From Octopus bimaculoides (taxonomy: Eukaryota), in contig NC_068982.1 in NCBI RefSeq assembly GCF_001194135.2, positions 51,206,079 to 51,270,078 on the forward strand: 64,000 nt of DNA, in the 5' to 3' direction. The notes under the pieces are model-generated. The model saw nothing but the letters and a program-made list of their open reading frames with translations. It did not search any database and was not told the DNA's origin. Positions 34,697 through 57,113 of this stretch are shown piece by piece (position 1 is the stretch's first letter; each line of letters opens with the position of its first letter). The position numbers and the translations under genes were made by a program.

Positions 34697-34730
<34 letters not shown>

Positions 34731-34835: not shown

Positions 34836-34919
<84 letters not shown>

Positions 34920-35740: not shown

Positions 35741-38542
35741 ATAGGCTTCTAATGATGTCATTTGCTTGCTATCTACTGTAAAAGCAAATCTAGGTTAATC
35801 ATCATCACATCTCTACTTTTATAACAATAATCTCTTGCTAAATGTATCCCCTGGTATTACTATAAAATTCATATACATCCAGTGGATTGATTATTCTCCA
35901 CACATTTACACAATTAATTACATTGACCATGTTACATCAGAATTTAGTAAAGATGAACTTGGCAATTGAATTATTGATTGAATTTGCAGTAAGTACTACT
36001 GGTGCTGCCCCTTCAATATTCTTTTAATTTCTATTAAAGGAAATGTTGCCCTATATTATCCTATTAATTAATTCTATATAGGAATATATTATATTTAACT
36101 TTGCTTTATGATGTACAGAAATATCATGAGTGAGTCATAGTTGTTTCCTTCTCAATAATTTTCTGACAATTTCCACAATTATAGGAAAGTTAATAGTTAA
36201 TCCAATCTATATACACAACAACTAATACTTAAACATCTCAGAAACAAAAATGCTAGTTGCTTTTGAATACCTTTCAGCTAATTTAATGAGCTAGCAGCTT
36301 TACTTTTTAAGTTACCATTTAAGAGACTTTGTTATTACTTCGGTTTAACTGTCATAACAGCCTTTGAGCAAGAGTGTTCTGTTGACAGTTTTCTATCATT
36401 CACTCAAGATTTCACCTATACCTTCTGCACTCGTTATTGAATGAACAGCATATGAGATATACTTTTTCTTATTTTTTTAGTAACAATTTGAGGAAAAATG
36501 AACTGTTACCTAAGTCAATGTTGAAGATATAATAACTCTTACCAGATTTCCAGATATACAATATTTACCATTCTAATTTGAGTTATCTACTCATCAGAAT
36601 TCATCTTACAACTGAATGTAATCCAGCAAAAGAGCAAACTAATATTCATGGTAACCAACTAAATTCAAACAGAGAGCTTTTTATGGAAATTTTCCTGTTT
36701 TAATTACCCCAGTAACATATTACAAGTACTTATTCTCTTGCAGAATGACAAACAATCTTGACATATTTTGATTTGAAAATTTTGTGGAATTGGTATAAAT
36801 TATCAATTCCCTGTTATTATGAATTATCTATTCTAGTATTCTGTTCTTCTTTGTTAATATATTTTATTTAGCAACCAGCATATATTAAAGAATTCATTTT
36901 TAATAATTATTTTATTTTTAAAGTTTTTAATCTTGTTTCCACAGATAGAAAAAAGGAAAAGCACTATAAAAATAGCAATAACTCTTATAGTAATAGGTTC
37001 ATGATTAAATAAAATAGACAATTCAAGATAATAATATCTTAGTTAAGTAAAATGTCCAAGATTTTTTTTTTCAAATTGCTTGTTTCATGTGCCCACAACC
37101 ACTATGGCAGTTTCTGTAAATATTCATACAAACAGGTGGTAACATATATGTAAATATATTACTAATAAGAATACCATAAGGAATGAATATCACTTCCAAT
37201 TCTTAGCTAAATGATTTATATCAAGAAAGTATCCAGTTTAAACCCTTAGTCAAACATTAAAATTACAAATCCATTAAATTCATATTAATAAGAAAATAAA
37301 ATGTTTAAAAATTTGCCATTAGTTGTAAACTTTTAACTCATCTAACATAAACATGCTGCAGGACTCCTTATCTTCTGAACTTCATGGCACTTGAAGTCAG
37401 CTGACTATCTCTGGTAGTTACTATGCTTCACTCCTATGCCACCTGAGATAGCTAAGCTGAAAACTGAAATCTCTGTCTTAGATATGTCCATTTATATCCC
37501 TCAAAACCAAAGCCACAACTCCAAATCTTGCAGGTGATTCACACATAGCCGTAGTACTGGAAAAGAGCATGGCTTATAGCATCTTAAGTGAGTGTGCTAT
37601 AAGGGGTTTATATCTCCTTATGGCACACTCACTTCCAGTGCATGAATGACTATTTTATTTACCACTGCAACTCCTGTGAGACTTCTATCCAAAAAGTAAA
37701 TGTACTTTTGTGCATCATATAATCTGCAAGTTCTCGCACTTTTCAAACTACAGCCAGACCAACTGCTCCCTTACTAAGATCTCTACTAACTTAGCAGAAT
37801 CCTTCTATTCAACATTTCCCAACCAAGATGGCTCTATAAGCAGTACTGCTATGTAGACAGTTTCCACTAACTCCACAATGCATTCCTTCTTCATTCCACA
37901 GATCTCACCATCATAAGTGCACTTTTCAAACCAACATGGCCACTGATTCCAAAAATTCTTCTTTTGTTATTCTTCATTAGAGAATTAATTGTCCCACTAT
38001 TCTTGTTGAATTCAAATGCAAATGAGATCTACAGTGGCACACTGCTCCACTTCTGGAGCAGTGCTGTTGCCCAAATATAGACGTATACATTCAGAAGAAA
38101 GCCAACCTTAATGACCTGTATGGAATTACTCACTGATACACTCAACCACTAACCTACAAGCACACCGTTTCCTCAAATTAATGTTTCTGTTGCTACTGCA
38201 ATGGCCTCTTCTTTGAGCTGACTGGTTGTGAATCACATCCATTCAGCTTACACATCTCTTTGAAGTTTTCTCCCCACTTTTGCTTTTCTTTAAGTTATTG
38301 ACTAACTTAACAACTGTTCAAGATGAACATCAACCATATTAATGTCAGTAGTCTGAGATTGTCAGCAATGATCATGAGTGCTTCCTTCTTCCTGAAGAAG
38401 CAATTAAAAAGCTTTTCACTGTTTCTCTCTCTTCAGACATAATCCACTACAAAGAAGAGCACCTCTCTGACCCTGCCAACTGTTGCCTTGTGTGTCTCAT
38501 TTCTAACATCTCAAAAAATAATTGAAGCAGTCATTTCCCCAA

Positions 38543-38544
<2 letters not shown>

Positions 38545-38634
<90 letters not shown>

Positions 38635-38640
38635 TCTCTC
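38545..38640. repeat. (TC)n microsatellite inside the CR1-like element
   Basis: About 48 TC units. Confidence 0.97.
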
Positions 38641-39039
38641 CTTCTCACTCTCTATAACCACTAACTAGTACACTTTCTTTAGAGCCCGTCTACCCTTGAG
38701 AAGTTTGCCAAAAGCAATGTCATTGCATATGACCACAGCAAATCTCAAAACTAACTGCAGACTTAAGGATTTCATTTGTGTCATCTTATGGACTGGATAC
38801 TTCCTGTCATTTCATACCATTCCTGCATGTACTCACTGAGATCTTAGTGACACACAGTTTATCAACTCTGGTGTACCCTAAAATTTGACTGTGACCTCGA
38901 CAACCTTCCTTTTGTACATTAACCAGTTTGCTATCAGCCCTAAAAATCACTAACTTCTGTGTAGATGATATCACTTTGCATTACTCCTTAACTTTCAATA
39001 CACTGGTATCACACACTCACACAACTGGCTTCTTTCAGT

Positions 39040-39175
39040 TTCTATCTGCTAAACCCACACACAAGGCTTTTTCAGTCCAGGACTCTAGTAGACATACTCA
39101 AAGTGCCATGTAGTGGGACTGAACCTAAAACCATGTGACTGGGAAGCATGCTTCATAACCACATAGCCATGTTTT
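39040..39175 (-). mobile_element. tRNA-derived SINE head nested in the CR1-like LINE
   Basis: caaagtgccatgtagtgggactgaacctaaaaccatgtgactgggaagcatgcttcataaccacatagccatg is the reverse complement of the 52981 head. Confidence 0.7.
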
Positions 39176-40902
39176 AGGAAATACTCATACTCTACATCTA
39201 AATTACTACAAAGCTTAAGAAATATCCGCAAAGGAGTACTGCTGCTCTATACACAAATATTTTGCACCACATCTAAAAGCTCATCCCCTACTGATAAGCA
39301 AATACTCACTAACACTCTACAACTTCTGGCTCATAGACATGTGGCCTCCTCTCTCTACTTATCCTATTGCTACCAAGAAACATCTGCTCTTCTGAGTTAC
39401 CTAAATTTATATCACCTCTACACAGACCTATAAAATAGTTTTCAGATCTACTTTCCTATCTGAAAAAAGTTTGGTGATCTAAATACAATATTTTAAAAAT
39501 CATTATTTTCAAAGTCTCCAAAGCATGCATTTCCTTTCTGCATAGAGTTAAGAAAATATTCTTAAAAATTCAAATTTACAAAGTAAATTTACAAAGTTCA
39601 GTACATTTGTATAAATATGTAATAATGGTGGGAAATTATTTTTGATAAGTGAAAAAACCTTTCCAAATTTTTTTTTTTTTTAATATTGGTGTCTTACTTG
39701 AAAAGAAAAAAAAACAAAGTTTCATCATGATTTTATTTTCAACAGATTATAAAATATCCTGAAATAATAATAATTTGCCAATTGATCCCTATAATGATAT
39801 ACATCTGTCATGATCATTTATAGACAAAATTCCTTTTATTATTTTTTGTCTTTTATTTCCACTTATCTGGCTTTATAAGAGTGCAATCAATACCAAAATG
39901 TCATCTTATTCGAAAACGATTTTTTTTGTAGTGTGAATTTTTTATATACCATACTATAGTACTGTTTTAAGGAAAATTCTGCAAACTATGCCTAAAATCA
40001 CATTGGCATTTAAATTGATTTAAAGTCATTCAAATTAATTTAAGATAAGCAATGCACTATTTTAAGTTTTCAATTTTTTTATGGACAGATATTTAGATAT
40101 AAAATGGGTAATACAAAACCACTGCTTTGGCTTTAAGAATTTCAAAAATTTAAACATGCATGCATCCAAAAAATTAGACATGCATGCTCCCATTTCCTTT
40201 CCTTTCCAATACCACCCTCCTCACTGGAGTCACCCAAATAGCCAGCACTTCTGCTATACTCATTTACTATTTAATATGCTCCTTTTGTAATTCCCTATAT
40301 ACTAAACATTTGTCTTGATAATGATTCTTTTACTGCATGCTATTTCTGTTCTACAAATCACTCCACCAAATATCTCTACATGTTCGGTATAACTCTGTGC
40401 AGAAGTTCCCTAAACTCTCCTCGACAATGTGAACATGAACTTATTTTCAGTTTTCAAGTTTTCTTAGACACCATACACATATACACATTACTTTATCATA
40501 TAGCCAATCCCTAAAATCCATCCCTACCTCACTCTATCCACCCTTCTTTCTATTTTTTTTTTCTTTTCTCTACTTTTACCAATTAACAGCCACCTCTCCT
40601 ACCATTCTGTTATTGAACATTGATATGTTCGCGTTTTTTTCTTGAGATGTCTACTATATAAGGACTTTAACCCACATGGATATATGCAGTATTGCACCTA
40701 AAGAATTACACTCATGGATATATGCAGGATTGCACCTAAGGGCTCATGCTTTGGTTTCTATGTATTTGGAAAGTTGAACTATGAACTTTTATGCCTCTTT
40801 TTTCTTCTTTCTTTCCATCTCCATATTCTCTTACTCCTTTCCTCTATGTTATCATCTTATTGATATATACCATTCTCATTTTCCATATTTTTTCCCCAAT
40901 TT

Positions 40903-40958
40903 ATCTCTGATGATGGAATATCCCATACTCAAGGATATCCCAGAAACAGCTGTAAGAT
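40903..40958 (+). ncRNA. Minimal type I hammerhead ribozyme motif (Penelope-associated type)
   Basis: ATCT-CTGATGA-TGGAATATCC-(9 nt)-GGATATCCCA-GAAAC-AGCT-GTA^AGAT: full catalytic core, stem II 9/10 bp, stem I 4 bp, palindromic stem III. Confidence 0.8.
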
Positions 40959-41544
40959 TTTGAATTTCTTCCTGTAATAATATCGTATATGACTTGAGAT
41001 GTTTGCCTTGCCTTAATGTTTGATGCCCTGTTTAACAATTATATATCCGCTGCATCGGAAATCTGCAATGGCTTCATAACTACTGTCTCAGCTGTAACCT
41101 TGGAGCCCCAGTGGTCCGTTACAGCACTTACCTAGTGTAGCTAATCGTTTAGATCCCTTGTGAACTAAGCCCTCATACAAATGACATATAGTGATAGAAA
41201 ATGAGATAACACATTTTCTGTCACTATATGTAATTTTTTAATTACTGATATGACATAATATGTCACATGTGTTTGTATATTGTTATTATTGTCCTTTTAG
41301 TAATCTAAAATAAACAAATTGACACAATACAGTGTCTGCAAGTTGATGAATACTACCTATTCCCCTCCATTTTCTTATTGCTATATAAATTAATGGTAAA
41401 ATATCTTTTTACCCTCACCCATTTATTGCACATTGTAATGCAAGGAAAAAAACACTAGTGTAATAATAATTGGGTATTCTTCCAGCAGTATATTGGATAG
41501 ATGTTATCCCTTAGTGGGTTGGATTCACAACCCCTAACTATCTT

Positions 41545-41545
<1 letters not shown>

Positions 41546-41597
<52 letters not shown>
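41546..41597. repeat. (AT)n microsatellite
   Basis: Direct reading. Confidence 0.95.
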
Positions 41598-41604
<7 letters not shown>

Positions 41605-42004
41605 GTATATTATGTGGATGATATTTTCAATCAAGACGGTATAACTGTATCAGATTCTTCAAGTGCGTCAACTCTGTGTATGTACATTTATTTACTAGAT
41701 TGCTGACATTTAGCAATAGTTTCTTCCATTGTGTTAACGTGCCGTTTTCTATCATTAATAAAACTGTTGATGTCTTTGACAATATAGGTATGCTAGCAAA
41801 TGTATATTATACATACTTTTGGTGTATAGAATACTACCAGATTTTGACATTAAGTTTTTGAATGAAAATTATTTCTTATACACTAAAAAATGCAGTGTGT
41901 GCACATGTACACACACACACACACACACACAATATATATATATATACATACATCCATATATACATACATACGTACGTACATGCATGCATATATATATATA
42001 TATA

Positions 42005-43372
42005 TCATCATCATCATCATTTAACATCCGTTTTAACAATGCTGACATGGGTTGGATGGTTCGACTGGTGTCTGGGAAGCCAGGAGGCTGTACCAGGTTC
42101 CAATCTGATCTGCCAGTGTTTCTACAGCTGGTTGCCCTTCCTAACGTCAACCACTCTGAGAGTGTAGTGGGTGCTTTTTATGTGCCACCAACACAGGGAG
42201 CTAGACAGGCAGTGCTGGCATCAGCCACAGCTACAATTTCCATTTGATTGTGGTTTGATTTGATTTTGATGTTAATGATGATGTACTTGACTCAATAGGT
42301 CTCTTCAAGCATGGCATGATGCCCTACGATCCAAAGGTACTTTTTGAATGGGCTGGTTATGCAACACTGGTGTAGGCTACAGTTGTGATCTCACTTTATT
42401 TTCTAAGTCTTCTCAGTCACAACATATCTCCAGAGGTCTCGGTCTTTTGTCATTGCCTCACCACTTCATCCCATGTCTTCCTGGGTCTCCCTCCACCACG
42501 GGTTCTTTCCACTGGTTGGGAGTAGCACTTCTTCACACAGCTCTCCTCATCCATCCATGGTACATGACCATACCAGTGCAGACATCTCTCTTGCACACCA
42601 CATCTGATGCCTCTTATGTCCAACATTTCTCTCAGGGTGCTTACACTTTGTCGTGTGTGCACACTGACATTATACATCCAGCAGATCATGCTAGCTTCAT
42701 TTCTTTCAAGCCTACACATTTCTTCAGCAGTCACGGCCCATGTTTCACTGCCATGAAGCATGACAGTTCGCACATATGCATCGTACAATCTACCTTTCAC
42801 TCTGAACAAGAGGCCCTTTGTCACCAGTAGGGGTAGAAGCTGTCTGAACTAAGCCCAGGCTATTCTGATTTTAGCAGTAACACTCTCTGAGCATCCACCC
42901 CACTACAGACTTGGTTGCCTAGGTAGCAAAAGCTATCAACTACTTCTAGTTTCCCCCCACTGGCATGTGATGGGACCTGTTTTCTGAGCATCTGTGGTGT
43001 TTACTGCCCCTGTGCATCTGCTGCACACGAAAGCTATCTTTCCGTTTAATCTTCCTTTGATGTTGCTGCACCTCTTATGCATCCATAGCTTACATTGGAT
43101 ATATCTTATGAAGTTTCTACCTACACCTTTTCTACAGATCAAGCAGGGCCACCTACCTGAAGGGTTGTGTGATGTGTTCGCCTTCCTACTTACTAGGACT
43201 TTGGTCTTTGCAACATTGACTCTAAGGCCCTTCGATTCTAAACCTTGCTTCCACACCTGAAATTTCTTCTCTAGTTCTGGTAGTGATTCTGATATGAGGG
43301 CCAGGTCATCAGCATAGAGGAGCTTCAAGGGGCAACCTGTCTTGAATTTCTCTGTTATTGCCTGGAGGATTA
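42005..43372 (-). mobile_element. RTE-clade LINE, 5'-truncated (RT C-terminal half, PHD-like finger, 3' UTR, (GAT)n tail)
   Basis: GCPLKLLYADDLAL, KGLRVNVAKTKVL, FCYLG, RTVMLHGSETW, LHWYGHV, GRPRKTW; (CAT)n at 42005-42020. Confidence 0.93.
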
Positions 43373-43504
43373 TGATATATATATTAAATACACAAAGCAT
43401 ATACATTAGTAAGTTTATTCAATAATATTTATTACACTAGAGCTGCTTTTACTTCATATATATGTAACATTTATGACTGGATACAGGCTTTATTTCATAT
43501 ACAC

Positions 43505-43615
43505 ATGAATTTTGAGTTCATCCACTATATATCAATTGGGTAAATGTCTTCCATTACAGCCTCAGACTAACCAATGCCTTATGAGTGGAATTTTGACAGA
43601 AACTCTATGAAAGTC
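43505..43615 (+). mobile_element. Degenerate tRNA-derived SINE
   Basis: ttgggtaaatgtcttccattacagcctcagactaaccaatgccttatgagtgga, homologous to the 52981 core. Confidence 0.6.
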
Positions 43616-46600
43616 ATTCATAAGAGTGTGTGTGTGTACATGAATGTTTAAATTCTTTGTCTCAGGATGAAATCATATGAGCAAAATTATGATGCTATGT
43701 TTTAGATTCTTGTAAACAATGCATCCAGAATCTCTGCATGTTTAAAGAATAGTGGAGTAAAATATTACTTACTTGAAAAGACTTGCTGGATAAGACTTGC
43801 AGCAGGAAAGGTATCCAGCTATAAAGATAATTACCTGATCCATTGCCAGCACAAAGAATGCTATTAGTTACAGCAGCTACCTTGCATGAAAGAAATACTT
43901 AACCCTAAAAGTAAGCTGTCTCTTGAACACTTGAAAATAAATCTGTTTTGAATAGATGTATGTTGTAACTTTCAAAATCCATAAAGTACTTTTTGAGCTA
44001 TTTGGACCAAAAACCATCTCAGATTGTTTAAAAAAGCAGTCTTGTTGTCGTAAGCCTGGTCTAGAGATGCTCTTGGTCTTCTCAATTATTAATGTAATAT
44101 TCTGCATACTTGGTCACTTTTCTGATTCGTTGATACTGAATTTGAACTTGCATGTCTCCTTTGGTTTTAGTTGGGCAATACACTTCTCTCATTTATGTAA
44201 ACACACAGGCCTCTTCCTAAGTACTTACTGGAAACTGTTCTTATATCTGTATGATCATATTTATTAGTCATCTTATGTTCTTTAGCAGTATATTTTGAAG
44301 TATGACATTGTAAAATATATCTTAAAGCTTCTTTCTTCTTAAATCATTTACATTGCATATGTTTTATTCTAATTTTCATTTTGTTCATAGTTGAGTGGTA
44401 ATATGGTTTCAGTTAAATTTAAGCCAAGCATGCCATATTTATAACTGTGTTATCTATATTCTCAAATATCATAGTTTATTTTAGATATGGTTTAATAGTA
44501 TCACCCGAAAGATTATATGTGTAAACTTGTGTTCTGTCTAATAAAACAATTTTGGTATTAGGCTTCATTTGTGATATGTTTATCTTGTTTCTTAGCAATG
44601 TGTTTGCCAAAATCAACATTTACAAAGTTATCTTTAGTCTGATTTCAACTCTGTGTTAATGTCTCCATAGATTCATCAAAACAATTTTAATTTGCAAACT
44701 GGAATTGGTAATCAAAATCTAGTCAACATTTCAATGCTTAATTTGTGGAAAAAATCTAAATCTTATTTAGGCCTAAAAATCCAATTTTATGCCTCTCTAA
44801 TGAAAAAAAGATTACAAATAAATTTTCTTATATTTCTGCTCAAAGTATATTTCTGTTGCATACTTATACTTTGGTTCATGAAAAAAATTCTGAAACCTCA
44901 TGCAAATCAACTGTTTGTCTATAAACCTTAACAAAACAAACTGCTGTTTTCTGATTTGAATTCTATTACTTTTCACTTATGAAGTTGAGTCTCATAATTT
45001 TTTTTTTAAGAATCTTGCTTATTCACCAAAAAATGCTTTAAAATGCAAGATGTTATAATTATATGGGGATTTTTATTTTACTTAGAATCCTTTGAATTCA
45101 ATATCATTAAATAGTATACTTATTTTAAAATATTGTTCTTGTTATTTTAATACATTCAGAAAAGCTTATTTTACAATCTAATTTAGAACTCAGTAACAGT
45201 AGTCTCTCTTCGTGGCAAGGTGACTATAAACATTGGTCTATTTTAGTGGCAAGATAACTATAAAATACCCTTTGTTACAGTACAAAAAAAATCATTGATA
45301 ATTTCTTAATTCAGGTCCTTTCATTAATTCAGTATTTAAAAATTCAATTAATGCTTTAAAATTGCAAATGTAAAAAGATTATGATAATTTTCATAAAATT
45401 TTTCCTATTTTTTTCTTTTGGATAAAACTAATATTAATCCCTTTACATTTAAAAATAATTTATACACTAAAGGAAGTTATTGTGAATATTAATACTATTA
45501 CTTATTAACTTCATGATTTTTATTATTCTCTTTACGCTTTACCCAGATTCTAAAATTTAGTGAGATAACAAATAATTAATATAGAAAAATAATCGCTTAT
45601 AAAATTAGACTAACACAAACAAAACTCTGTAACTCCCCCTTTTTCTTATTAACAGGTAATCAAATTTCTACAGGATGACCAGCTGTTGCCTTGCCACAGG
45701 TATGAATCTTAGTACTAGAGATAAGTGTATAGTAACAACTAAGATGAATTCTAAGTTGACCCTGGTGTAGCTCAAATATGAAATGTTAGGAGTACGTTCA
45801 ATACATTACATCTGCTGTTCTTTGAGATTAATATAAACATATATAGACTGGGAAGATGTTTACACAGTTAAAAAATACTAATTGAAATGAAATATGTAAC
45901 AACCGAATTTCTTGTAAGAATATGTTCAATATTAATTTAAAGTATTTTATAAAACAGAAATTATGATTTTTCTTTTTTCTATTACAAGAATAAGTCATAG
46001 ATTATTTTAATATTTGCATATGACTCTGAAATCTTGGCATCTTACACATTCATTATCCAATTCAAATTTGCTTTTGCTTTTAGTTTTATTTATTTTTAGT
46101 TTTGCTCACTTTTATTGCAATATTAATGACAGGACATTTTATTTTATATCTAGTTTATTGTTGGATGTTTTATGTCTTTATCTGACTGTTTCCATCACTT
46201 GACTTATAATTTTTAAACCATTCCAGTTTTGTCACATCAGAATTCATTTCTCATTTAAATAATTGCATGTGTAACTATTTTAAATAGAAAACAGGCACTT
46301 TTAGCAATTATTACTTAGATTTTTAAAGTTGGACATTGTTCTACAAATTTCTCCATACTTCTGAACACTAAACTGAAATACTTAGAATATCTTGATATAA
46401 CAGATCATTGAGTTTTGAGAGATAACAACATATGTTATCCAAAATATGTTCATTACATGCAATTTGCAATTTTAATTACATGCAAAAAAATCTAAAATTC
46501 AGTTACTTGCATAATCTAATCATCAGTTATTAATAGCTACATCCAATTTCAGTTAAAAATAAATTATAAAAAAACATTGTTTTACAAAACATTTTCATCA

Positions 46601-48968
46601 CATTCGTTTTTGTCATCATTTTACAGTCATTTCTCCATGCAGGCATAGATTCAATGTTTTTGTGTGTGCACACATACACACAAAGCAACTCTTATGTCTT
46701 ACTGTGTGAACTTAATGTATTTCATTGTACCACCAGAACTAGAGAAATTGTCCCATATGGGGGAAATAAAGAGTTTCTTCTAGTCTATCAGCTCCTATTC
46801 AGAGTTACTACCTGCCTAGATATGCAACCTGCAATATGACTTCCAGAATTCATATTGTGCTCATATATTCCACTTTGGCATAGTTTCTACAACAGAGAAC
46901 TTCTCTCACCAACCACTTTGTGCAGTGCTTTGGGTGCATTTTATTATTATGTAGGCACTAAAGTTATCATCCTTGTATGAGTTCTATTTGGAGTTATTGC
47001 TCTCCTTGATAGGTATCCTACAATACCACTTATGTCAACATCTTGCTTCTATGTTCCATTTTTCAGGTATAGTTTCTACAACTGGATGCCCTTCATATTA
47101 CTAATCACTTTACAATGTGTTAGGTATTTTATTGTGCCACTGACACTAGAAAGATTCTCCCATGAAGGAGGACTAAAACACACTCTTTCTCCTACATCAG
47201 TTCTTATTTGGAGTTGTTATTCAACTATTATCTTCTTAAACAAGTAGCCCGTGATGCAACTTGAAATGCCTTGTGTGTGTGCGTGTGTGCACGTGTGCAT
47301 GCGTGTGTGTGTGTGTGTGTGCATGTGAGTGTGTGTAAGCATGATGTAAACAGTTCAACTCAGTTCTACTGCCACATTACTTAAATTTTTGGTGTAATTT
47401 TCATCATCATTATCATACATCAGCTCTTCTATGCTGGCATGGGTTTGACAGCATCGAACATCTCACCACTGGTCTTTTGCCACACCATTTACCACAGTTC
47501 TTCAACCAGTAGCACATTCTACTAAGGAAAAGTCAACCAACTCTTTTGTTGTGTATGTTGTTTTTATAGGTTCCTTGTAGGATTATATGGCTGGATTGTG
47601 TTTCTATCACCAACTACATTACAGCATGGACTGGATACATTTTGGAGATGAAACCACATGCAAAAGATCTAAAGAGCTCCCTCTCCCTTACATTGTCTGC
47701 ATTTTTACCTTCCTTTCTTGTGTGGATTGGAGGGAGAGTTTAGCAAATAAGTGGTCAATATCAATAAACATAGAAGGTGGGGAGTTTAGGCAATCAGGAT
47801 CAGTGGAGTTCCATTGACCAATAAGTGCTTTTGTCATTGGCGGCAAAACGATTCATATTTAATATTAAATTGTCCTTCTTAGAAACAATATTATTTAAGA
47901 TTATCAGAATTCATATATAATTCATAAAAAAGATTTATTCACTTTATAACTGTCTACACACAAAGAGTTTCTTGTCTTTGATTTTGTATGTTTAAAAGAG
48001 AAATGGCCAACATAAATGACATGTTGGCCATATTTTAAATTAAATCAAATTTAAAGTTGGGTCATATTTGAAACTAAATTGTTCTTCTTGAAACATAATT
48101 TTAAAAAAAAAATAGGGAATAGTACATAGTCAATAATAAATGAATAAATATGGAATCTTAGTTTTATTGCATCAGAGGTATCCTCTGAAGTATACCCCTG
48201 CTAGTATCAGAGGTAACTGCTGAAGCTTTCTCAGCTTATGTGTTTCAATGAAAAAGGACCTGCATTATATGTAGAAAAGTAGAGTAACTGTAAATGTTCT
48301 TTCTGTTTACCAATACCAAATTTTGTATATGAAGTGCTTTTATTCTTTCGCTTAAATTGTCTACAAAAGTTATACTGATAAAGAAATTGTCTCAAATTTA
48401 ATATTGTTTGTAAATGTACAAGGATTATTATATGCTATTTTATGATGTTCACACTAAATATGTTTAGAAAAATTGTATTAAAAACTTTTTTTTTTAAATT
48501 GCTAATGAATATGAAGAGAAAGATACAAGGAAAATTGAATGAAAGGTCTTTCATCCTAAATTGTGAAGACAATAAACATCTTTAACTTCTTCACTCGTGT
48601 AAACTGAGTGAAAGCTATAAGACTAAAGACACTTGCACAATTACACCTACATGCACAAATGAGTGTATACAAAACTATTGCTTATATCATGATGCAAGGT
48701 AATTTTAAAGCAATTAAATGAGTAGTGTCTTTCAGGCTTTTCTAAAATCATTAGCAACACTTGAAATTAAAACTGGGTTAGGTCTTATCTTACCAAGGAC
48801 TGCCTGGCCTGCAGTATATGTACATGCATAAAAGCATGCATACATTATGTCATATTATCAAATGTACTTTTTTACAGTGATATAACATAACAAAAAATTG
48901 TTATCAGTGACTTGAAAATTGTCTAATACTGCTACATCTACATTGTACATATTATTCTACATTTATAG

Positions 48969-49058
48969 GGACCGCCAGGCTTGAAGGGAGAACCAGGTGA
49001 ACAAGGATTAAGAGGAATAGCTGGACCAATTGGACCTCCTGGCTTACCTGGACCCCCT
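48969..49058 (+). CDS. Collagen exon, 90 bp, GPPGLKGEPGEQGLRGIAGPIGPPGLPGPP
   Basis: ctacatttatag|GGACCG...CCCCCT|gtaagt; 10 triplets. Confidence 0.96.
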
Positions 49059-50402
49059 GTAAGTAAAATCATTATTAGACTTGCATATCTTTTTTTTTTA
49101 TTATCATTATTGCAGAAGGCAGTAAATTTTGAGAGAGAAAGATTATAATTTATTATTAAACTGATGCCAATACATTATTGGTACTTTATAAAGCCCAGGA
49201 ATAAGGGAATTAATCAACTCTAGGATTTAATCTCAGAATATAAAAGGATGTAGAATTGCTAGTCAAAATATTTTGTCTGGTATGCTGATTTCTGCCAATT
49301 TAAACAAGTTTTATATGCTCAACAAAAACAGAATGTGTCCTTTCTTTGAACATTTATGTGTGTGTGAGAGGAGAGGGAGTGCATTTGGTATAGTGTGATA
49401 CATGATCAGTTTCTACTCTTGATTGCATTTCCCCTGTAAAGAATGTATGAAAAAGAATTATGTATTATTTTGTTATTAAACTTAAATCTTGAAAGATTTA
49501 AATTAAAATATTACAAACAAATAATGTTTCTCTCTCTGTTAATAAGTTTTCTATTTACATCTTAAAGCTTGCATTAGGCAGTGTTGAGGTTTGTTCTTTT
49601 ACCTACTATTTGAGTAATGCTTCTTTCTGTCTCAGATATATATATATTGTAAATAATTATATATTGTTTACTGATTATGTATGTATTTTGATTTTATTTA
49701 TTTTATTGCATGATTTATTTTAGAAATGAAATTTGTTGTAATGGTTTCGTCTGATATCCTATATTTTACCTGACAGAATTTACTATACCAATGTTTGTTT
49801 TAGCTGATTGAACTTAATATTGTCATCGTTGATTTTTAATTCTGAATTATCCATTTTGTAAATAAAATTATATTTCTTTTAAACTTGATCAATTTATCAG
49901 TGTTCTCTCTAATGTAGTAGTCAGACATTTTTTCTTTTTTCTTTTTTACAGTTGAATCATGCCAGAACGACAACTGTGAAGGTAGGAGTTGAGGGATAAA
50001 TTTGGGGAAATGCAAATACAATTTTAAAAGAAAATGAATTATCAAAAGCTATTTTCAAAATCAGAAGACACTAAGACAGCTTCATAATTTCAATGACTAA
50101 TACTCATTCCTAAGTTATGCGTATGTCAGACAATATGAAGTAAAAATTATAACAGACTCATCTATTTGGCTCAGAGCTATGTATATATATGAGTGTATCT
50201 ATCTGTCTATCTATCTATCTATCAATCTATATATGTATGCATATATATGTGTGTGTGTATATGTATCTATATATTTATATGTATATGTATCTATATATGT
50301 ATATATATATATATATATATGTATGTCTATATATTTGTATATTGTATATATGTATGTATATATATACTTGTATATTGTATATATGTATGTATATCATAAA
50401 TG

Positions 50403-50459
<57 letters not shown>

Positions 50460-50515
50460 GGAAGAATAAATAGAATCAAAAGGAAGAGGGAGTACGATTT
50501 GACAGCTGTTTAATG

Positions 50516-50624
50516 ACCACTAGACATGTTTCAATACAACATAGATCCACATATAATATACAAGAATTAAATTAAGTAATGGTTTACCTGTATAATGGGA
50601 CCTAGTTGTATCTCCTCAGGTGAT
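50516..50624 (-). ncRNA. Hammerhead motif in the left foldback arm (probably impaired: CUA triplet)
   Basis: Minus strand ATCAC-CTGAGGA-GATACAAC...GTTGTATT-GAAAC-ATGT-CTA^GTGGT. Confidence 0.65.
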
Positions 50625-50742
50625 ATATAATCGTTGTCTCCATAAATAAATGTTTGATTTCGGTGCTATCACATCCAACTGGCTCCAGTTCAGTGTGATA
50701 GCATCAAAATCAAACATTTATTTACAGAGACAGCAATTATAT

Positions 50743-50854
50743 ATCACCTGAGGAGATACAACTAGGTCTTATTATACAGATAAACCGTTACTTAATTTAA
50801 ATTTAAATCCTGTATATATGTGGATCTATGTTATATCGAAACATGTGTAGTGGT
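50743..50854 (+). ncRNA. Minimal type I hammerhead ribozyme motif in the right foldback arm
   Basis: ATCAC-CTGAGGA-GATACAAC(TAGGTC)...(GATCTA-T)GTTATATC-GAAAC-ATGT-GTA^GTGGT; stem I 5 bp; stem II about 14 bp with one mismatch and one bulge. Confidence 0.8.
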
Positions 50855-51260
50855 CATTAAGCAGCTGTCGAATCATATCCATCGAATCATACTCCATCTT
50901 CCTTCCAATACACAAGGAATGCCTAAGCCTAGAATTGGTAATATACCATAATACTGCTAGCTATCTGGTAATTCTAAGGGTAAATGAGCTCTATTTTGTA
51001 CTCTAATACGTTCTTATATATATATATACACACACACATACATATATACACACACACATACATATATGCATGTGTTTATGTATATATGTATAGATATATA
51101 TATGTGTGTGTATGTATATAAAATATAATTAAGATTTGGTTGAATTAAGTACTTAAATTGAGGCACCTTGTTAAGGCAATCTAATTTTTACACCTAAACA
51201 ATATCAGATGAATATCAAACAGTGCTTTTCTCACAGTAAAACAATAGTTTTTCTGTGAAT

Positions 51261-51400
51261 GACAACCTCTCTCACCAACCTCCAAAAACCTCTCTCGACA
51301 ACCTCTCTAGACAACCTCCGACAACCTCTCTCACCAACCTCCGACAATCTTTTTCACCACCCTCCGGAAACCTCTCTCGCCAACCTCAAACAATCTCTCC
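51261..51400. repeat. Degenerate minisatellite, unit approximately GACAACCTCTCTCACCAACCTCC
   Basis: About 6 imperfect copies of a 21-23 bp unit. Confidence 0.8.
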
Positions 51401-51793
51401 CTTCTCCAGCTGACAGTTTTTGTCCTTTTTCGTGATGGAGAATACACCTTTTGTGGCAGTTATAACGAAATTGCTTTCTTATATCAGAGTAATAAGGCAT
51501 TTCAATAGAACATCTTTACCCACCAGAATTACTATGTATTAATGAGGTTTATTAGTATTGACATAATAAGCTATCTTTTATAAAACAAATATGTTTTCCT
51601 AAACTTATTGGTACAATTCATATTAAAATTAGAGGTTAAATTCAACAATTTAAGTCTAGATGTAAGTATCAAAAATAGTTCATCCTAGACATAAATTGCA
51701 CCTATTACTACCAAAGGAGTAAGGTTTTGCATATCCAATCATCGACCATTTAATTTCATAATCAATGTTCTTTTCCTTCAATCCCCATATATA

Positions 51794-51798
<5 letters not shown>

Positions 51799-51832
<34 letters not shown>
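51799..51832. repeat. (GT)n microsatellite
   Basis: Direct reading. Confidence 0.95.
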
Positions 51833-51840
<8 letters not shown>

Positions 51841-52103
51841 GGTTATGAGTGGTAGTGGTGTCAATGAGACCCAGAGGTGTCAGGTAATGCTGAGTAAGTG
51901 CTATGGATAGACCATAGTTAAGCTCCAGGTTCAGTGATTTTATTCATAAGGTATTGGAATCTCATATGTATACCATTCTGCCTAAATAATGGATTTACAA
52001 ATACAATATCCCTGCATATCTCATATCTATTTTCATTCCTCTACTTCACTCTCTATTTCGTATCATATCTAAATTAACTATTGCTTAACCATCTTCTCAC
52101 ACC

Positions 52104-52151
52104 GTCTCCGATGAAGGGATATAATAAATATCCTGGAAACAGCTGTAAGAC
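52104..52151 (+). ncRNA. Minimal type I hammerhead motif, CCGAUGA core variant
   Basis: GTCT-CCGATGA-AGGGATAT-aataa-ATATCCTG-GAAAC-AGCT-GTA^AGAC; stem I G-C pair replaces the A-U pair of the 40903 copy. Confidence 0.7.
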
Positions 52152-52980
52152 CTTCTATTTATAAATGTTCTAAAATCTACACAGCCTTGGTTTTTTTGTC
52201 TAATTATGAAAAGTAAANNNNNNNNNNNNNNNNNNNNNNNNTATATATATATATATATATATATTGTGCTGTATTGAGATGCGAGTAGGATTTATGTTGT
52301 GGATGGATAGCATGGGGCCCAAGTCTTGGGTATCTTTTAAAGGTGATGCAAACATCATTTGGGCAACGCTGATGGGATATTTTCTACATCATGCAGATGG
52401 TGTAGTGCTCACAGCGATGTTGGTGAGAATAAAGTTTGAGCTTTTCTAGTCAACCCCAATAGTCAAGGCCTGTCATACCATCTACCTTTTTTTGTAATTG
52501 ACCTTTGAGGTGCTTCAACTTTCAAGATACTTTATTTCATATATATGTATATATATGGACACCACTCAGGCTCTAGAAATAAACCCATTATGAAACTTCC
52601 TAGAGGAATGTGATGGCACGGATTGGAAAACAGAATATTTTCCAATCAAAGTTCAATGTAGAGGATTCGTTGGACTCTGTGTGAGGTGACTGTTGTTGTC
52701 TCTAGGCCTAACTTATCATAAAGCAAATACCACTGTGAGTGATATCCAGACTACAGTGTAGAAGGTAATGGCTAGAAGAATACTCAGTAAAGCCTAATAA
52801 CCAGTTGATCTAGCAGGTAGGGCTTCATTTCAGTGTGCAATGATGCCATCGAAAAGAAAGCCCTGAAACTGCATGCATACTCTCCTGATGACCCCATAAA
52901 CTTGTTAGCATCCAGTATGAAGAGCTTTCAACTAGTAGTACTTGCATCTGTAAGTTGTTTGCAAGAAATAAATAAATATA

Positions 52981-53345
52981 GGTGTGGCTGTGTGATAAGT
53001 AGCATGCTTACCAACCACATGGTTCCGGGTTCAGTCCCACTGTGTGGCACCTTGGCCAAGTGTCTTCTACTATAGCCTCAGGTTGACCAAAGCCTTGTGA
53101 GTGGATTTGGTAGACGGAAACTGAAAGAAGCCCATCGTTTGTATGTTTGTGTGTCTGCATTTGTTCCCCACCATCGCTTGACAACTGATGTTGGTGTGTT
53201 TACGTCCCTGTAACCTAGCCGTTTGACAAAAGAGACCCATAGAATAAGTACTAGGCTTACAAAGAATAAGTCCTGGGATTTATTTGTTCAACTAAAGGCG
53301 GTACTCCAGCATGGCCACAGTCAAATGACTGAAACAAATAAAAGA
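52981..53345 (+). mobile_element. Near-complete tRNA-derived SINE
   Basis: Head GGTGTGGCTGTGTGATAAG...GGTTCAGTCCCACTG (A/B-box-like), core ccttggccaagtgtcttctactatagcctc, 3' part ending gactgaaacaaataaaag. Confidence 0.85.
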
Positions 53346-53350
53346 ATGTG

Positions 53351-53388
<38 letters not shown>

Positions 53389-53577
53389 GAATGCTCAACA
53401 CCACATTGTTGTATACATACACACATACATACACACACACACACACACACTCATATATATTTATATATATATATATATATAAGAAATAAGAATAAAATAT
53501 ATAATATATAATATATAACAAAAAATAGAATAAGCTATTTAAATGACATAAACATAATATGTTTTTTGTTTCTTCAG

Positions 53578-53619
53578 GGTGAGGCTGGTGTTATTGAAGG
53601 TGGTGGCAGCGGTGAAGGG
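53578..53619 (+). CDS. Collagen exon, 42 bp, GEAGVIEGGGSGEG (end of a helical segment and start of an interruption)
   Basis: tttgtttcttcag|GGTGAG...GAAGGG|gtaagt; phase 0/0. Confidence 0.9.
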
Positions 53620-54575
53620 GTAAGTGTATAAAAATCTTAAAAGTACAGATTTCATATCCTTTTTTTAAAATGTTTTTCTTTAATACTTCTAATTGGAAAG
53701 AAAATATTATAGGATGTCAGGTACTTTTCATTTTCATTTTTTTTTTCTTTCAAATACAGTCAGTATTATACAATGAATGACAAATATAGCTAATTTATAT
53801 CATTCTTTCATTTTCTATAAATATTTCATCCTTTTCTTTTTTTTTTGTGGTTGTGATAACTGTTAAACAAAGGAGAGCAGACAGATTTTTTTATCAATCA
53901 TTCTCTTAATCACATATAATAGCCAAAGGCATTGCAGTCTATATGCAAAAGCTGACCAAATATTTTAGTGATTCTAAACATGAAAAATTAATTTTATAGA
54001 TTCTCTTAACTCCACTTTCCCAAATGCTTTGCATTGATTGTTTTCATATTTAGTCTAATTCATATTCCTATGTCAGTAAACCAAGAAGAAAACAGATGTT
54101 TTGAAATATTAAGGATTCAGTCACTGTGTCATTGCTACAGCAGCTTTAAAAGTGTCACTTCAAATAACTCATAAAGCATTCATGTACTCATTTAACTAAT
54201 TATAGATATTATAACCAATATTCCTTTTCAATACTAACAATAAGATATTAAATCACTTTTATATCCTTATATATATCCAGATTTTTTTTAAAATCTATAA
54301 CAGATAATAAAACTTACAAAAAGAGGGTTGAAATTAAAAGCTCCATAAATAGAAAAATGTGGTGATTTTTTCTATTCAATACCTAACATGATAAAGGGTA
54401 AACCATAAACAGTAGAAGAGTTATGAGTTCTTTGTAATTTAAATGTCAATATGATCACCTGATTGGAAAGAAAAACTGATATGAGGCAAAATGCATTATT
54501 TTGTCTTTAAAATATATTTCACAAAAGCATGCACTATAGTTTTATTAAAACATATATAAACATTCTATTCTATAG

Positions 54576-54608
54576 ATACCAGGTCCAACCGGTCCTCCCG
54601 GCCCTTCG
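54576..54608 (+). CDS. Collagen exon, 33 bp, IPGPTGPPGPS
   Basis: attctattctatag|ATACCA...CCTTCG|gtaaga; helix resumes. Confidence 0.92.
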
Positions 54609-55229
54609 GTAAGATATCATTTAGCTCATTTAAAATTTTAGTTAATGTGTTTGGTTTTTTTTTTGTGTTTTTTTTTTTTTACCTCCGAGTGTTAATAACT
54701 AGAGTAATATAATAACTTAACTTAATTTGAGCCCCCAAAAGTACTTCATATTATCCTAATTTGAAAGATTGAACTAGACTAAGGTTAATGATGTCAAAAG
54801 CAAATAATTCCTTAAGTTAAGCCTATTTCTATTTCATTGATAGAAGAAATAAATTTGAGTATTTCATTAATATATCAATTAAAAGTTTACTTTTAAAATA
54901 TCCATGAAAAATGTTTCCATTTATTGAATTTGATAAACTAAACCAATTATAGTAAATAAGGAAATTTACTAACTCTATATTATGTTGATAGTGTCTTTAG
55001 AATATAAGATAAACTGTTATTCTATATAAAATGTTAGAGAAAATCAAGTGCAAAATAAAGATCCAAGAAATAAATTGTTTTTGAAACTAAACTGAAGGCA
55101 CTGATATTATTTACCAGAACAAGGTACACAATTAAGATAAAATAAGTAGTAGCATCCAGGGAAACTAGTGATGGTTTGTGGCAAATAGTGAGTACAAACA
55201 GTTGGAAGTTTAAATAATTGGTAGACAAG

Positions 55230-55700
55230 ACCCTTCATGCAGAGAAATGTTTTCTGATGTCAAAGAGTTGCTCAAAAAATGATCCACTAGCCAACAGCTG
55301 GACTCATCTCATGTAGAGATTTGCAAGTGATGTAGTGAATAAGGTTGGTGAAAGTACAAAGTTGTCTGCAATTTAAAATTGGGATTGAGAACTGGTTATA
55401 TACTGATTGTGATGAACTGACAAATGTAATATACAAAGTAGAAGCATTTGAAGGTACTGGAAGAAGAAAACTTCTGACCAATAAGGTCTTGCAAGTTTTT
55501 TGTCTCTTTTGAAAAAGAGGCGGAACGGTTTTGGAAAGATGAAGTAGTTTGAGAGTCAAAGGAAAAAAAAATGGAAGTTGTAGATAATATTCTGCTAATG
55601 TAACAGAGCTAACAAGTGTAAGTTAGAACAGGGAACCTTGTTTGTGGGTGTCTTCATGTGGAGCAAAAATGACATGGCTCAGTCAGAGAGATTCTTGGAT
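55230..55700 (-). mobile_element. Decayed CR1/Jockey-group RT fragment
   Basis: Minus-strand PVPSNASTLYITFVSSSQSVYNQFSIPILNCRQLCT resembles the GVPQGS...PIHSYADD region. Confidence 0.45.
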
Positions 55701-55763
55701 TTATTGGAACACAGTTGTGATACATGAATTGAGAATAAGGAAAATTTGAAGCAAAAGTGTAAG

Positions 55764-56160
55764 TCATCATCGTCATTTAACATCTGTCTTCCATGCTGGC
55801 ATGGGTTGGACAGTTTGACAGGAGCTGGCAATCCACAGGACTGCACCAAGCCCCACTGTCTGTTTTGACATGGTTTTTACAGCTGGATGCCCTTTCTAAC
55901 ACCAACCACTTTACAGAATAGACTGGGTACTTTTTATATGGTACCAGCAGGGTCTGTTTTGGCATGTTTTCATGGCTTGATGCCCTTCCTAGTACCAGCC
56001 ATTTTACAGAGTGGACTGGGTGCTTTTTGCATAACACCAACACTGGAGACTTGCATGACAAAGATCCTTTAAGGGGGAGGTTGGTATTGAAAGAGGTGGC
56101 TTTGCATCAGTGATAAGAGGTTAGAGTATGACAAAGACAGAAACAGATGTCTTGTAGAGG
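55764..56160 (-). mobile_element. RTE LINE 3' UTR, with internal duplication of the tttctacagctggatgccc block
   Basis: (CAT)n-ttaacatctgtcttccatgctggcatgggttggacag...; two successive ttt..agctgg/ggcttgatgcccttcc blocks. Confidence 0.75.

Positions 56161-57082: not shown

Positions 57083-57113
<31 letters not shown>

What the first reader, a model, noticed from the sequence alone, without database searches (positions are those of the whole stretch)
40903..52151. Cluster of sense-strand hammerhead ribozymes in collagen introns; two with the same self-complementary stem III flank one exon
Seen: three complete hammerhead-type cores on the transcribed strand, with predicted cuts after 40954, 50849 and 52147. 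The 40903 and 52104 copies both carry GAAACAGCTGTAAGA, in which ACAGCTGT is a perfect 8-nt palindrome. They lie about 11.2 kb apart on either side of the 90-bp phase-0 exon 48969-49058. Known: minimal hammerheads of Penelope-like elements have a vestigial stem III with a palindromic loop and are reported to cleave best as dimers. Inference: both motifs are in one pre-mRNA and could pair through the palindromes in cis. That would either cut out the exon-bearing segment (in-frame skipping or transcript decay) or release an ~11-kb intronic RNA, a possible ribozyme-based control of collagen isoforms. The null is passive transposon debris.
Basis: partly seen in the sequence, partly recalled or inferred. 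Interest (0 to 1): 0.85.

Follow-up and report, generated by a model that had tools for sequence, protein, structure and literature searches.

The report
Two retrotransposon-type hammerhead relics in introns
Two short hammerhead-ribozyme motifs of the kind carried by Penelope-like retrotransposons sit in neighbouring introns of an octopus collagen gene, but only one has an intact catalytic core, the third reported copy is not a hammerhead, and nothing suggests they control the gene, so this looks like ordinary transposon debris.

Summary
Partly confirmed, and ordinary. Of the three "complete hammerhead cores", only one is complete. This is 40903-40958 (+): ATCT|CTGATGA|9-of-10-bp helix II|GAAA|C-AGCT-G|TA^|AGAT. 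The copy at 52104-52151 (+) has the same GAAACAGCTGTAAGA but reads CCGATGA, a U4-to-C change in the essential CUGA turn, with an A·G mismatch at positions 10.1/11.1. The "copy" cutting after 50849 has no CUGAUGA box. It lies in one arm of a 385-bp foldback and scores as noise with a model built from the two real copies.

The two real motifs far exceed chance, and one helix I pair covaries (A-U to G-C). Their flanks are unrelated, and no Penelope-like coding sequence adjoins them. Their shape matches the published minimal hammerheads of Penelope-like elements and retrozymes. Those occur in thousands of mostly solo copies per animal genome, many of them intronic, and cleave poorly even as dimers.

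A cis dimer across 11.2 kb would have to be domain-swapped. The intact core would cut only at 52147, with a 3-bp helix I. The cut at 40954 would depend on the mutated core. Three other ACAGCTGT sites in the same introns could compete for pairing. Genome-wide copy number and orthologous conservation could not be tested.

The parts
40903..40958 (+). Copy 1: a complete minimal type-I hammerhead motif. Helix I is 40903-06 with 40955-58 (4 bp). The CUGAUGA box is 40907-13. Helix II is 40914-42 (9 of 10 pairs, with U10.1-A11.1 in place of G-C). GAAA is 40943-46. Helix III is the palindrome ACAGCTGT at 40946-53. The predicted cut is after A17 at 40954.
   Evidence: (84.9 bits, by construction). The monomer MFE does not form the three-way junction: the hammerhead fold is -6.1 kcal/mol against an MFE of -13.1.
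52104..52151 (+). Copy 3: the same motif with a damaged core. Helix I is 52104-07 with 52148-51 (4 bp, G-C where copy 1 has A-U). The core box is CCGATGA at 52108-14 (U4->C). Helix II is 52115-35 (7 bp, closed by A·G). GAAA is 52136-39 and ACAGCTGT is 52139-46. The nominal cut is after 52147.
   Evidence: (68.5 bits, by construction). An assembly gap (24 N) starts at 52218, 67 nt downstream.
50493..50877 (.). There is no CUGANGA box, and the mirror copy lies on the other strand in the left arm. It is not a hammerhead.
   Evidence: (I2: 116-nt arms, 89% complementary, 2 nt apart; I13: 63-nt arms, 90%).
48969..49058 (+). A 90-bp phase-0 collagen exon (GPPGLKGEPGEQGLRGIAGPIGPPGLPGPP). It is the only exon between the two motifs.
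   Evidence: Pfam Collagen, E=1.9e-32, for the concatenated exons.
32193..48968 (+). The intron that holds copy 1, lying between exons 32121-32192 and 48969-49058.
49059..64000 (+). The start of the intron that holds copy 3. No further Gly-X-Y exon occurs before the window ends.

Best explanation
The two motifs are solo relics of the minimal type-I hammerhead ribozyme that Penelope-like retroelements (PLEs) carry in their terminal repeats. The small non-autonomous 'retrozyme' derivatives of PLEs carry it too. Each was deposited independently in an intron of an octopod collagen gene, from different source lineages or as insertions barely longer than the ribozyme.

In the parent element the ribozyme is thought to process the retroelement transcript. 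Two copies pair through the palindromic helix III to form a double hammerhead. Here the copies are stranded 11.2 kb apart. One has lost the U-turn uridine and both lack the canonical G10.1-C11.1 pair. They are most likely catalytically dead or nearly so, and neutral for the host gene.

Shown here: the motif anatomy, significance over chance, the core defect, the lack of shared flanks, the absence of tandem partners or adjacent PLE coding sequence, and the octopod origin of the window. Inferred: the PLE/retrozyme origin (from architecture and the literature, not from a linked PLE) and the lack of activity or function.
For: Architecture: helix I is 4 bp, helix II is 7-10 bp, and helix III is 2 bp with a palindromic AGCU loop. 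This matches published PLE-type hammerheads. Those have helix II larger than usual (6-8 bp), helix I of 4-5 bp, palindromic 15.2-16.2/loop 3, thousands of mostly solo and highly variable copies per metazoan genome, and low activity even as dimers.

The motif is beyond chance. It shows a compensatory A-U to G-C change in helix I, and 93% of cells are paired against 8-45% when the partners are slid.

Only the roughly 50-nt motif is shared. The flanks score at shuffle level: upstream 12 vs 13.1±2.1, downstream 8 vs 8.6±1.3. They match nothing else in the window or in 21 kb of Octopus vulgaris. That fits independent insertions from diverged sources rather than a local duplication. Retrozyme consensus units as short as 51 bp are reported, and 43.9% of Xenopus tropicalis copies lie in introns.

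Copy 3 has U4->C, and substitutions in the CUGA turn give low activity.

The window is octopod. Its LINE RT is 60-72% identical to Octopus proteins, and 53 repeat matches at up to 89% identity link it to O. vulgaris. Penelope elements are among the abundant, anciently shared repeat families of coleoid cephalopods.
Against: No PLE RT or GIY-YIG coding sequence lies next to either copy on the + strand. The only candidate retroelement of that kind in the window (60368-61293) is on the other strand, about 8 kb away, and its class could not be resolved. The PLE origin therefore rests on resemblance.

The G10.1-C11.1 pair, said to be highly conserved in PLE hammerheads, is absent from both copies. 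Rfam hammerhead models do not score them.

No further copies could be retrieved. There were none in about 24 kb of other octopod DNA and only chance-level hits in metagenome and viral scans. A multi-copy family in this genome is therefore assumed, not shown.

The 15-nt identity amid unrelated flanks could also reflect selection at the locus.
Confidence: 0.8

Rival explanations
1. The two motifs pair in cis through ACAGCUGU within one collagen pre-mRNA. They form a double hammerhead and cut out, or sever, the exon-bearing segment, which regulates collagen isoforms or transcript level.
For: Both motifs are on the transcribed strand and flank one exon. The 8-bp self-duplex is stable in isolation (-11.1 kcal/mol) and forms in the predicted heterodimer MFE. 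A nested domain-swapped double-hammerhead structure can be written, at -25.3 kcal/mol against -22.8 for the two separate monomer MFEs. PLE hammerheads in the two terminal repeats, about 3 kb apart, are proposed to act as dimers. Intronic hammerheads conserved in amniote genes are a precedent.
Against: Copy 3's core is mutated at U4, so the cut at 40954, which needs copy 3's core in the swapped dimer, is not expected. The remaining possible cut (52147) would use a 3-bp helix I because of the A-U/G-C covariation. Neither copy has G10.1-C11.1.

The double-hammerhead fold is 5.4 kcal/mol above the predicted dimer MFE. Copy 1 also has a competing fold that buries CUGAUGA. Three other perfect ACAGCTGT sites in the same introns compete for pairing. 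Reported dimer activity is low even for intact tandem copies.

Two of two copies in sense orientation has a chance probability of 0.25. All exons in the window are in-frame, so this exon is not special.
Confidence: 0.03
2. Copy 1 alone is a domesticated intronic hammerhead, analogous to the RECK/CTCL/DTNB ribozymes of amniotes. It acts as a monomer or with a protein cofactor, and copy 3 is an irrelevant decayed relic.
For: Copy 1 has all 11 invariant core nucleotides, a GUA cleavage triplet and a strong helix II, in sense orientation in an intron. Host factors have been proposed to assist PLE hammerheads in vivo.
Against: Helix III is only 2 bp. Single PLE-type motifs showed no detectable self-cleavage in vitro. 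Position 10.1-11.1 is U-A. Helix I is only 4 bp, with no evident loop-loop tertiary contacts. The hammerhead fold is 7 kcal/mol above the MFE, and the z-score is unremarkable at -1.2. No conservation data are available.
Confidence: 0.05
3. The motifs are chance matches in AT-rich intronic sequence and have no common origin.
For: Rfam hammerhead models find nothing. The relaxed-core descriptor gives 0.235 hits per shuffled window. The flanks are unrelated.
Against: The strict descriptor expects 0.035 hits per window, and the observed copy far exceeds its minimum requirements. The two motifs share 37 of 51 aligned positions, including an exact 15-mer placed in the same register relative to the core box and helix II. 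Their alignment score was reached by 0 of 500 shuffles.
Confidence: 0.02

Closest known systems
Minimal type-I hammerhead ribozymes of Penelope-like elements (Cervera & de la Peña 2014, PMC4209133; dimer cleavage: Lünse, Weinberg & Breaker, RNA Biol 14:1499, cited in PMC6765202 but not readable here)
   Same: Type-I topology. CUGAUGA and GAAA boxes (copy 1). Helix I of 4 bp and a long helix II of 7-10 bp. A vestigial helix III with a palindromic sequence able to form an intermolecular 8-bp helix. They occur as solo, sequence-variable copies scattered through an invertebrate genome that carries Penelope elements.
   Different: No adjacent PLE terminal repeat or RT/GIY-YIG ORF. The 10.1-11.1 pair is U-A (copy 1) or A·G (copy 3) in place of the highly conserved G-C. 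Copy 3 has U4->C. Family membership within this genome was not demonstrated, because only two copies were seen.
Non-LTR retrozymes of animals (Cervera & de la Peña 2020, PMC7229834, abstract only; Li, Clavereau & Pollet 2026 preprint, 10.64898/2026.07.22.740005)
   Same: Small non-coding units carrying a type-I hammerhead with a short palindromic helix III. Monomeric derivatives are dispersed evenly along chromosomes and are frequently intronic. Consensus units can be as short as 51 bp, which would explain why nothing beyond the ribozyme is shared.
   Different: Retrozymes are defined by tandem arrays, and here each motif is single with no tandem partner. Canonical retrozyme hammerheads have a 6-bp helix I and a 4-bp helix II with loop-loop contacts. 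Here helix I is 4 bp and helix II 7-10 bp.
Conserved intronic hammerheads of amniotes (RECK, CTCL/C10orf118, DTNB; de la Peña & García-Robles 2010, summarised in PMC6155905)
   Same: Type-I hammerheads on the sense strand inside introns of protein-coding genes, thought to derive from retroelement ribozymes.
   Different: The amniote ribozymes are ultraconserved at orthologous positions, have intact cores and tertiary contacts, and cleave in vitro. None of this is shown here, and one copy has a core defect.
Double-hammerhead structures of ASBVd and newt satellite 2 transcripts (Forster et al. 1988, cited)
   Same: An unstable helix III that is stabilised only when two copies in one transcript pair. 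Each active site is built from parts of two units.
   Different: Those dimers form between identical adjacent units in multimeric transcripts. Here the two units are 11.2 kb apart, differ in helix I, and one has a mutated core.

Membership tests
Hammerhead ribozyme (core definition) | C3-U4-G5-A6-N7-G8-A9 box | tested here: met
   Copy 1 has CTGATGA at 40907-13. For the other two sites the feature is NOT met: copy 3 reads CCGATGA (U4->C), and the 50849 site reads CTGTATA.
Hammerhead ribozyme (core definition) | G12-A13-A14 followed by the A15.1:U16.1 pair and a non-G nucleotide at position 17 | tested here: met
   GAAAC-AGCT-GTA^A occurs in both copy 1 and copy 3, giving a GUA triplet with cuts after 40954 and 52147.
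Hammerhead ribozyme (core definition) | Three helices around the core | tested here: met
   Helix I is 4 bp in both copies. Helix II is 9 of 10 pairs (copy 1) and 7 bp (copy 3). Helix III is 2 bp. Overall 93% of cells are paired, against 8-45% when the partners are slid. The monomer MFE forms only helix II.
Hammerhead ribozyme (Rfam covariance models, all hammerhead families in release 15) | Score at or above the gathering threshold | tested here: not met
   No hammerhead family hit at gathering score or at E<=10, on the whole window or on 100-nt slices around each copy. Such models may generally miss hammerheads with almost no helix III; this is my inference and was not tested.
Hammerhead ribozyme | Site-specific self-cleavage | not testable with these tools
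   Needs in vitro transcription or RNA end mapping.
PLE-associated minimal hammerhead (Cervera & de la Peña 2014) | Short helix I (4-5 bp) and enlarged helix II (6-8 bp) | tested here: met
   Helix I is 4 bp in both copies. Helix II is 9-10 bp (copy 1) and 7 bp (copy 3).
PLE-associated minimal hammerhead (Cervera & de la Peña 2014) | Palindromic 15.2-16.2 / loop 3 that allows a dimeric extended helix III | tested here: met
   ACAGCTGT is a perfect 8-nt palindrome in both copies. The self-duplex is -11.1 kcal/mol.
PLE-associated minimal hammerhead (Cervera & de la Peña 2014) | Highly conserved G10.1-C11.1 pair | tested here: not met
   Copy 1 has U-A and copy 3 has A·G at the pair that closes helix II.
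PLE-associated minimal hammerhead (Cervera & de la Peña 2014) | Extra unpaired nucleotide between A9 and 10.1 | tested here: inconclusive
   In copy 3 the A after CCGATGA is unpaired, but so is the opposing G. In copy 1 the corresponding U pairs with A.
PLE-associated minimal hammerhead (Cervera & de la Peña 2014) | Location in the terminal repeat of an element encoding RT and GIY-YIG endonuclease | tested here: not met
   There are no RT/EN-like ORFs on either strand within about 3-4 kb upstream and 70-650 bp downstream of either copy (by eye, not scanned against Pfam). The RT-like ORFs at 60368-61293 are on the minus strand and of unresolved class. The source paper says most genomic copies are likewise solo.
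PLE-associated minimal hammerhead (Cervera & de la Peña 2014) | Membership of a multi-copy consensus family with covariation in the same genome | not testable with these tools
   The source genome cannot be searched by DNA here. There are two copies in 64 kb and none in about 24 kb of other octopod DNA. One compensatory pair separates the two copies.
Non-LTR retrozyme | Head-to-tail tandem array of hammerhead-bearing units | tested here: not met
   The covariance model with filters off finds only the two single copies, 11.2 kb apart. No direct repeat surrounds either copy.
Domesticated intronic hammerhead (RECK/CTCL type) | Sense orientation within an intron of a protein-coding gene | tested here: met
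   Both copies are on the + strand, within introns 32193-48968 and 49059 onward of a + strand collagen gene.
Domesticated intronic hammerhead (RECK/CTCL type) | Conservation at the orthologous position across species | not testable with these tools
   The collagen query returned nothing usable, and no orthologous locus could be fetched.

The most novel reading that the evidence does not exclude
Copy 1's intact catalytic strand captures copy 3's cleavage site through the 8-bp ACAGCUGU helix within the nascent collagen pre-mRNA. Copy 3 would serve only as substrate and as helix III partner. The cut in the downstream intron at 52147 would give a slow, possibly chaperone-assisted, ribozyme brake on collagen transcript completion. 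In that case the U4->C change in copy 3 would be irrelevant or even adaptive, because it makes cleavage one-sided.
Probability: 0.03. Interest if true: 0.7.

Novelty: new member of a known kind. Interest (0 to 1): 0.13.

Why it matters
It would also be an invertebrate counterpart to the conserved intronic hammerheads of amniotes.

As it stands, the value is modest. The finding documents PLE-type hammerhead relics in an octopod genome; no paper in the held library mentions 'hammerhead ribozyme' together with 'Octopus bimaculoides'. It also shows that such motifs must be read nucleotide by nucleotide (U4, 10.1-11.1, helix I register in a swapped dimer) before a function is proposed.

Tried and rejected
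- **Rfam at gathering and E<=10 thresholds**. There were no hammerhead hits. The sub-threshold miRNA-like hits are (TA)n/(CA)n microsatellites.

- **A shared ~200-bp repeat around both motifs.** A lenient blastn alignment suggested one. I rejected it after shuffling showed that the flanks alone are not similar.

- **Exact-pattern scans.** The pattern CTGATGA-N(8-38)-GAAACAGCTGTAAGA gave 0 hits in viral contigs and 4 in metagenome contigs. My rough estimate of the chance expectation is about 4. None of the four folds as a hammerhead.

- **Protein searches.** The RT-like ORF gave only two relatives. The collagen query gave nothing at E<=1e-10, because candidates were saturated by collagen-like words. 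That lost the route to orthologous loci. The third search (LINE RT) identified the octopod context.

- **Exact look-up of ten window ORFs.** None is in the protein collection, so the hammerhead family could not be traced through spurious ORFs.

- **Sampling other DNA.** I searched O. vulgaris (21 kb), an ENA cephalopod-like contig (2.7 kb), Mytilus (12.5 kb) and an unrelated ENA contig with the covariance model. No copies were found. The sample is too small to bound copy number. Look-ups of the two O. bimaculoides proteins failed.

- **A 15-bit model hit at 31848-31922 (-).** It is an unrelated perfect hairpin.

- **Classifying the RT-like ORFs at 60368-61293 as PLE.** Pfam, NCBIfam and PDB sequence searches were all inconclusive.

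- **The Lünse et al. paper on dimeric cleavage** is not held in the library.

Full report
**What is in the sequence**

The site at 40903-40958 on the + strand is a complete minimal type-I hammerhead motif. It reads ATCT | CTGATGA | TGGAATATCC-cauacucaa-GGATATCCCA | GAAA | C-AGCT-G | TA^ | AGAT. Helix I has 4 bp, helix II has 9 of 10 pairs, and helix III is a 2-bp stem on the palindrome ACAGCTGT. The predicted cut is after 40954.

The site at 52104-52151 carries the identical 15-mer GAAACAGCTGTAAGA and the same layout. Its 5' box, however, is CCGATGA, which is U4->C in the CUGA uridine turn. Its 7-bp helix II is closed by an A·G mismatch.

It lies in the right arm of a 385-bp foldback at 50493-50877. 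The left arm carries the mirror sequence on the opposite strand. It is not a hammerhead.

So the count is one complete core, one damaged core, and one false positive.

**Is it more than chance?**

A structural descriptor was run on 200 dinucleotide-preserving shuffles of the window. It required both core boxes, helix II of at least 5 pairs, a palindromic helix III and helix I of at least 3 pairs. It gave 0.035 hits per window with the strict core and 0.235 with a relaxed core.

The two motifs align with each other at score 20, against 7.2±1.5 for shuffles; 0 of 500 shuffles reached the observed score. On their pairwise alignment, 93% of the proposed pair cells are standard pairs, against 8-45% when the partners are slid. 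The outermost helix I pair shows a compensatory A-U to G-C change.

A covariance model built from the two copies was run with filters off over both strands of the window. It finds only those two copies, and it does not find the 50849 site at E<=10. A 15-bit hit at 31848-31922 (-) is an unrelated perfect hairpin.

Rfam's hammerhead families find neither copy, even at E<=10 on 100-nt slices. These motifs have almost no helix III, so I do not read that as evidence against their being hammerheads.

**Context**

Seven Gly-X-Y exons lie on the + strand: 1630-1701, 7183-7254, 11636-11734, 21990-22061, 28359-28466, 32121-32192 and 48969-49058. All are phase 0 and multiples of 9 nt, with good splice sites. 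Concatenated, they match Pfam Collagen at E=1.9e-32.

The window is octopod. A LINE RT/PHD remnant at 42450-43406 (-) has its closest named relatives in Octopus bimaculoides (72% and 65% identity) and O. vulgaris (60%). A 21-kb O. vulgaris locus shares 53 repeat matches with the window at up to 89% identity.

**What the motifs are**

Their architecture matches the hammerheads that Cervera and de la Peña described in the terminal repeats of Penelope-like elements:
- helix II larger than usual;
- helix I of 4-5 bp;
- a palindromic 15.2-16.2/loop 3, so that two copies can form an extended intermolecular helix III;
- thousands of copies per metazoan genome, most of them solo and highly variable;
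- no cleavage as single motifs and only low cleavage as dimers.

A 2026 preprint links the small non-autonomous 'retrozymes' to PLE terminal repeats. It reports consensus units from 51 to 972 bp, and 43.9% of Xenopus tropicalis copies in introns. Penelope elements are among the abundant, anciently shared repeats of coleoid cephalopods.

Only the roughly 50-nt ribozyme is shared between the two copies here. The flanks score at shuffle level and match nothing else in the window or in the O. vulgaris sample. I first thought a 200-bp repeat was shared, but the shuffling test removed that idea.

No RT or endonuclease coding remnant adjoins either copy, and neither copy has a tandem partner.

The simplest reading is two independent insertions of very short or heavily 5'-truncated units from diverged source lineages. 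The ribozyme would have been kept similar by selection on the mobile element, not on the host gene. The PLE/retrozyme origin is an inference from architecture and literature. It is not shown by linkage to a PLE here.

The 8-nt palindromes can pair. The self-duplex is -11.1 kcal/mol, and the predicted heterodimer MFE contains it.

Following the strands through such a dimer shows that it must be domain-swapped. The strand that carries helix I-5', CUGAUGA, helix II and GAAA from one copy meets the U16.1-A17 site and helix I-3' of the other copy. This is my derivation from connectivity. The corresponding nested structure evaluates to -25.3 kcal/mol. That compares with -30.7 for the dimer MFE and -22.8 for the two separate monomer MFEs.

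The consequences are:
- **Copy 1's core.** Its intact core would act on copy 3's site (52147). It would use only a 3-bp helix I, because the fourth pair has covaried.
- **The cut at 40954.** This would depend on copy 3's core, which carries U4->C. Comprehensive single and double mutagenesis of a hammerhead found low activity for every change in the CUGA turn except the C3:G8 swap.
- **The 10.1-11.1 pair.** Neither copy has the G10.1-C11.1 pair reported as highly conserved.
- **Copy 1's own fold.** As a monomer it prefers a fold that buries its CUGAUGA box: the hammerhead fold is -6.1 against an MFE of -13.1 kcal/mol.
- **Competing sites.** Three other perfect ACAGCTGT sites lie in the same two introns (35512, 50502, 59497). 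One is only 1.6 kb from copy 3.
- **Exon phase.** Every exon in the window is in-frame, so that property is not special to this exon.

Excising the exon-bearing segment needs both cuts and is therefore not expected. At most, a slow one-sided cut in the downstream intron is conceivable.

**What could not be tested**

They need DNA-level access to cephalopod assemblies, which these tools do not give.

The pattern scans of viral and metagenome collections returned only chance-level, non-hammerhead hits. About 24 kb of other octopod DNA contained no copy, which is uninformative at the density seen here. The collagen protein query failed, which closed the route to orthologous loci.

**Verdict**

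The classification as PLE-type hammerheads is reasonable for two sites. The regulatory model is unsupported and is contradicted in its key step.

The finding is best filed as new members of a known kind of retroelement ribozyme relic, of low interest. A small residual chance, a few percent, remains that copy 1 has been co-opted.

Noticed in passing
window 50493-50877: A 385-bp foldback. The inner arms 50567-50682 / 50685-50800 are 89% complementary and 2 nt apart. The outer arms 50493-50555 / 50815-50877 are 90% complementary. It is MITE-like or a hairpin-forming element, flanked by (TA)n-rich sequence, and both arms contain CAGCTG.
   Followed up: partly
window 60368-61293 (-): Three overlapping, frame-shifted ORFs with reverse-transcriptase-like motifs (YIDD box, LPFLD). 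They are 53-55% identical to an RT fragment annotated in Mytilus edulis. The motifs recall Penelope-like RTs, but Pfam, NCBIfam and PDB sequence searches could not assign a class. No hammerhead lies next to them.
   Followed up: partly
window 42450-43406 (-), partial inverted copy 62362-62631 (+): A LINE remnant with RVT_1 and a PHD finger. It is 60-72% identical to Octopus bimaculoides and O. vulgaris proteins, and 84% identical at DNA level to a copy in O. vulgaris. This identifies the window as octopod.
   Followed up: yes
window 42076-42178, 55764-55910, 63770-63939 (also 14637-14843, 47057-47109): A dispersed short repeat family (SINE-like), 79-85% identical between the three main copies (68% for the weak 47057-47109 match). 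It is also present in the O. vulgaris locus L006 and the ENA contig L008.
   Followed up: partly
window 35512, 40946, 50502, 52139, 59497: The 8-mer palindrome ACAGCTGT occurs 5 times, against 0.5 expected from base composition. Only two occurrences belong to hammerhead motifs. The excess of the other three is unexplained.
   Followed up: partly
window 51261-51401: A minisatellite of about 23-nt units (GACAACCTCTCTC...), 5-6 copies at 69-73% identity.
   Followed up: no
window 31848-31930 (-): A perfect 15-nt inverted repeat, TGATGAGGATATTTT / AAAATATCCTCATCA, about 200 nt upstream of exon 32121. It gave a weak spurious hit to the hammerhead model.
   Followed up: partly
window 9518-10410, 22319-22328, 34753-34835, 52218-52241: Assembly gaps (runs of N). 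The last starts 67 nt downstream of copy 3, so its downstream flank is incomplete.
   Followed up: yes
window 7183-7254: A collagen exon with a non-Gly-X-Y interruption (…GEDAEIRIIELK). Exon sizes are 72, 72, 99, 72, 108, 72 and 90 nt. Both features point to a non-fibrillar, interrupted-helix collagen rather than a fibrillar one.
   Followed up: no
window 22330-22520, 34660-35132, 41495-42008, 50226-50454, 50994-51124: Dozens of sub-threshold Rfam 'miRNA' hits (mir-297, mir-3149, mir-466 and others) all fall on (TA)n/(CA)n microsatellites and are low-complexity artefacts.
   Followed up: yes
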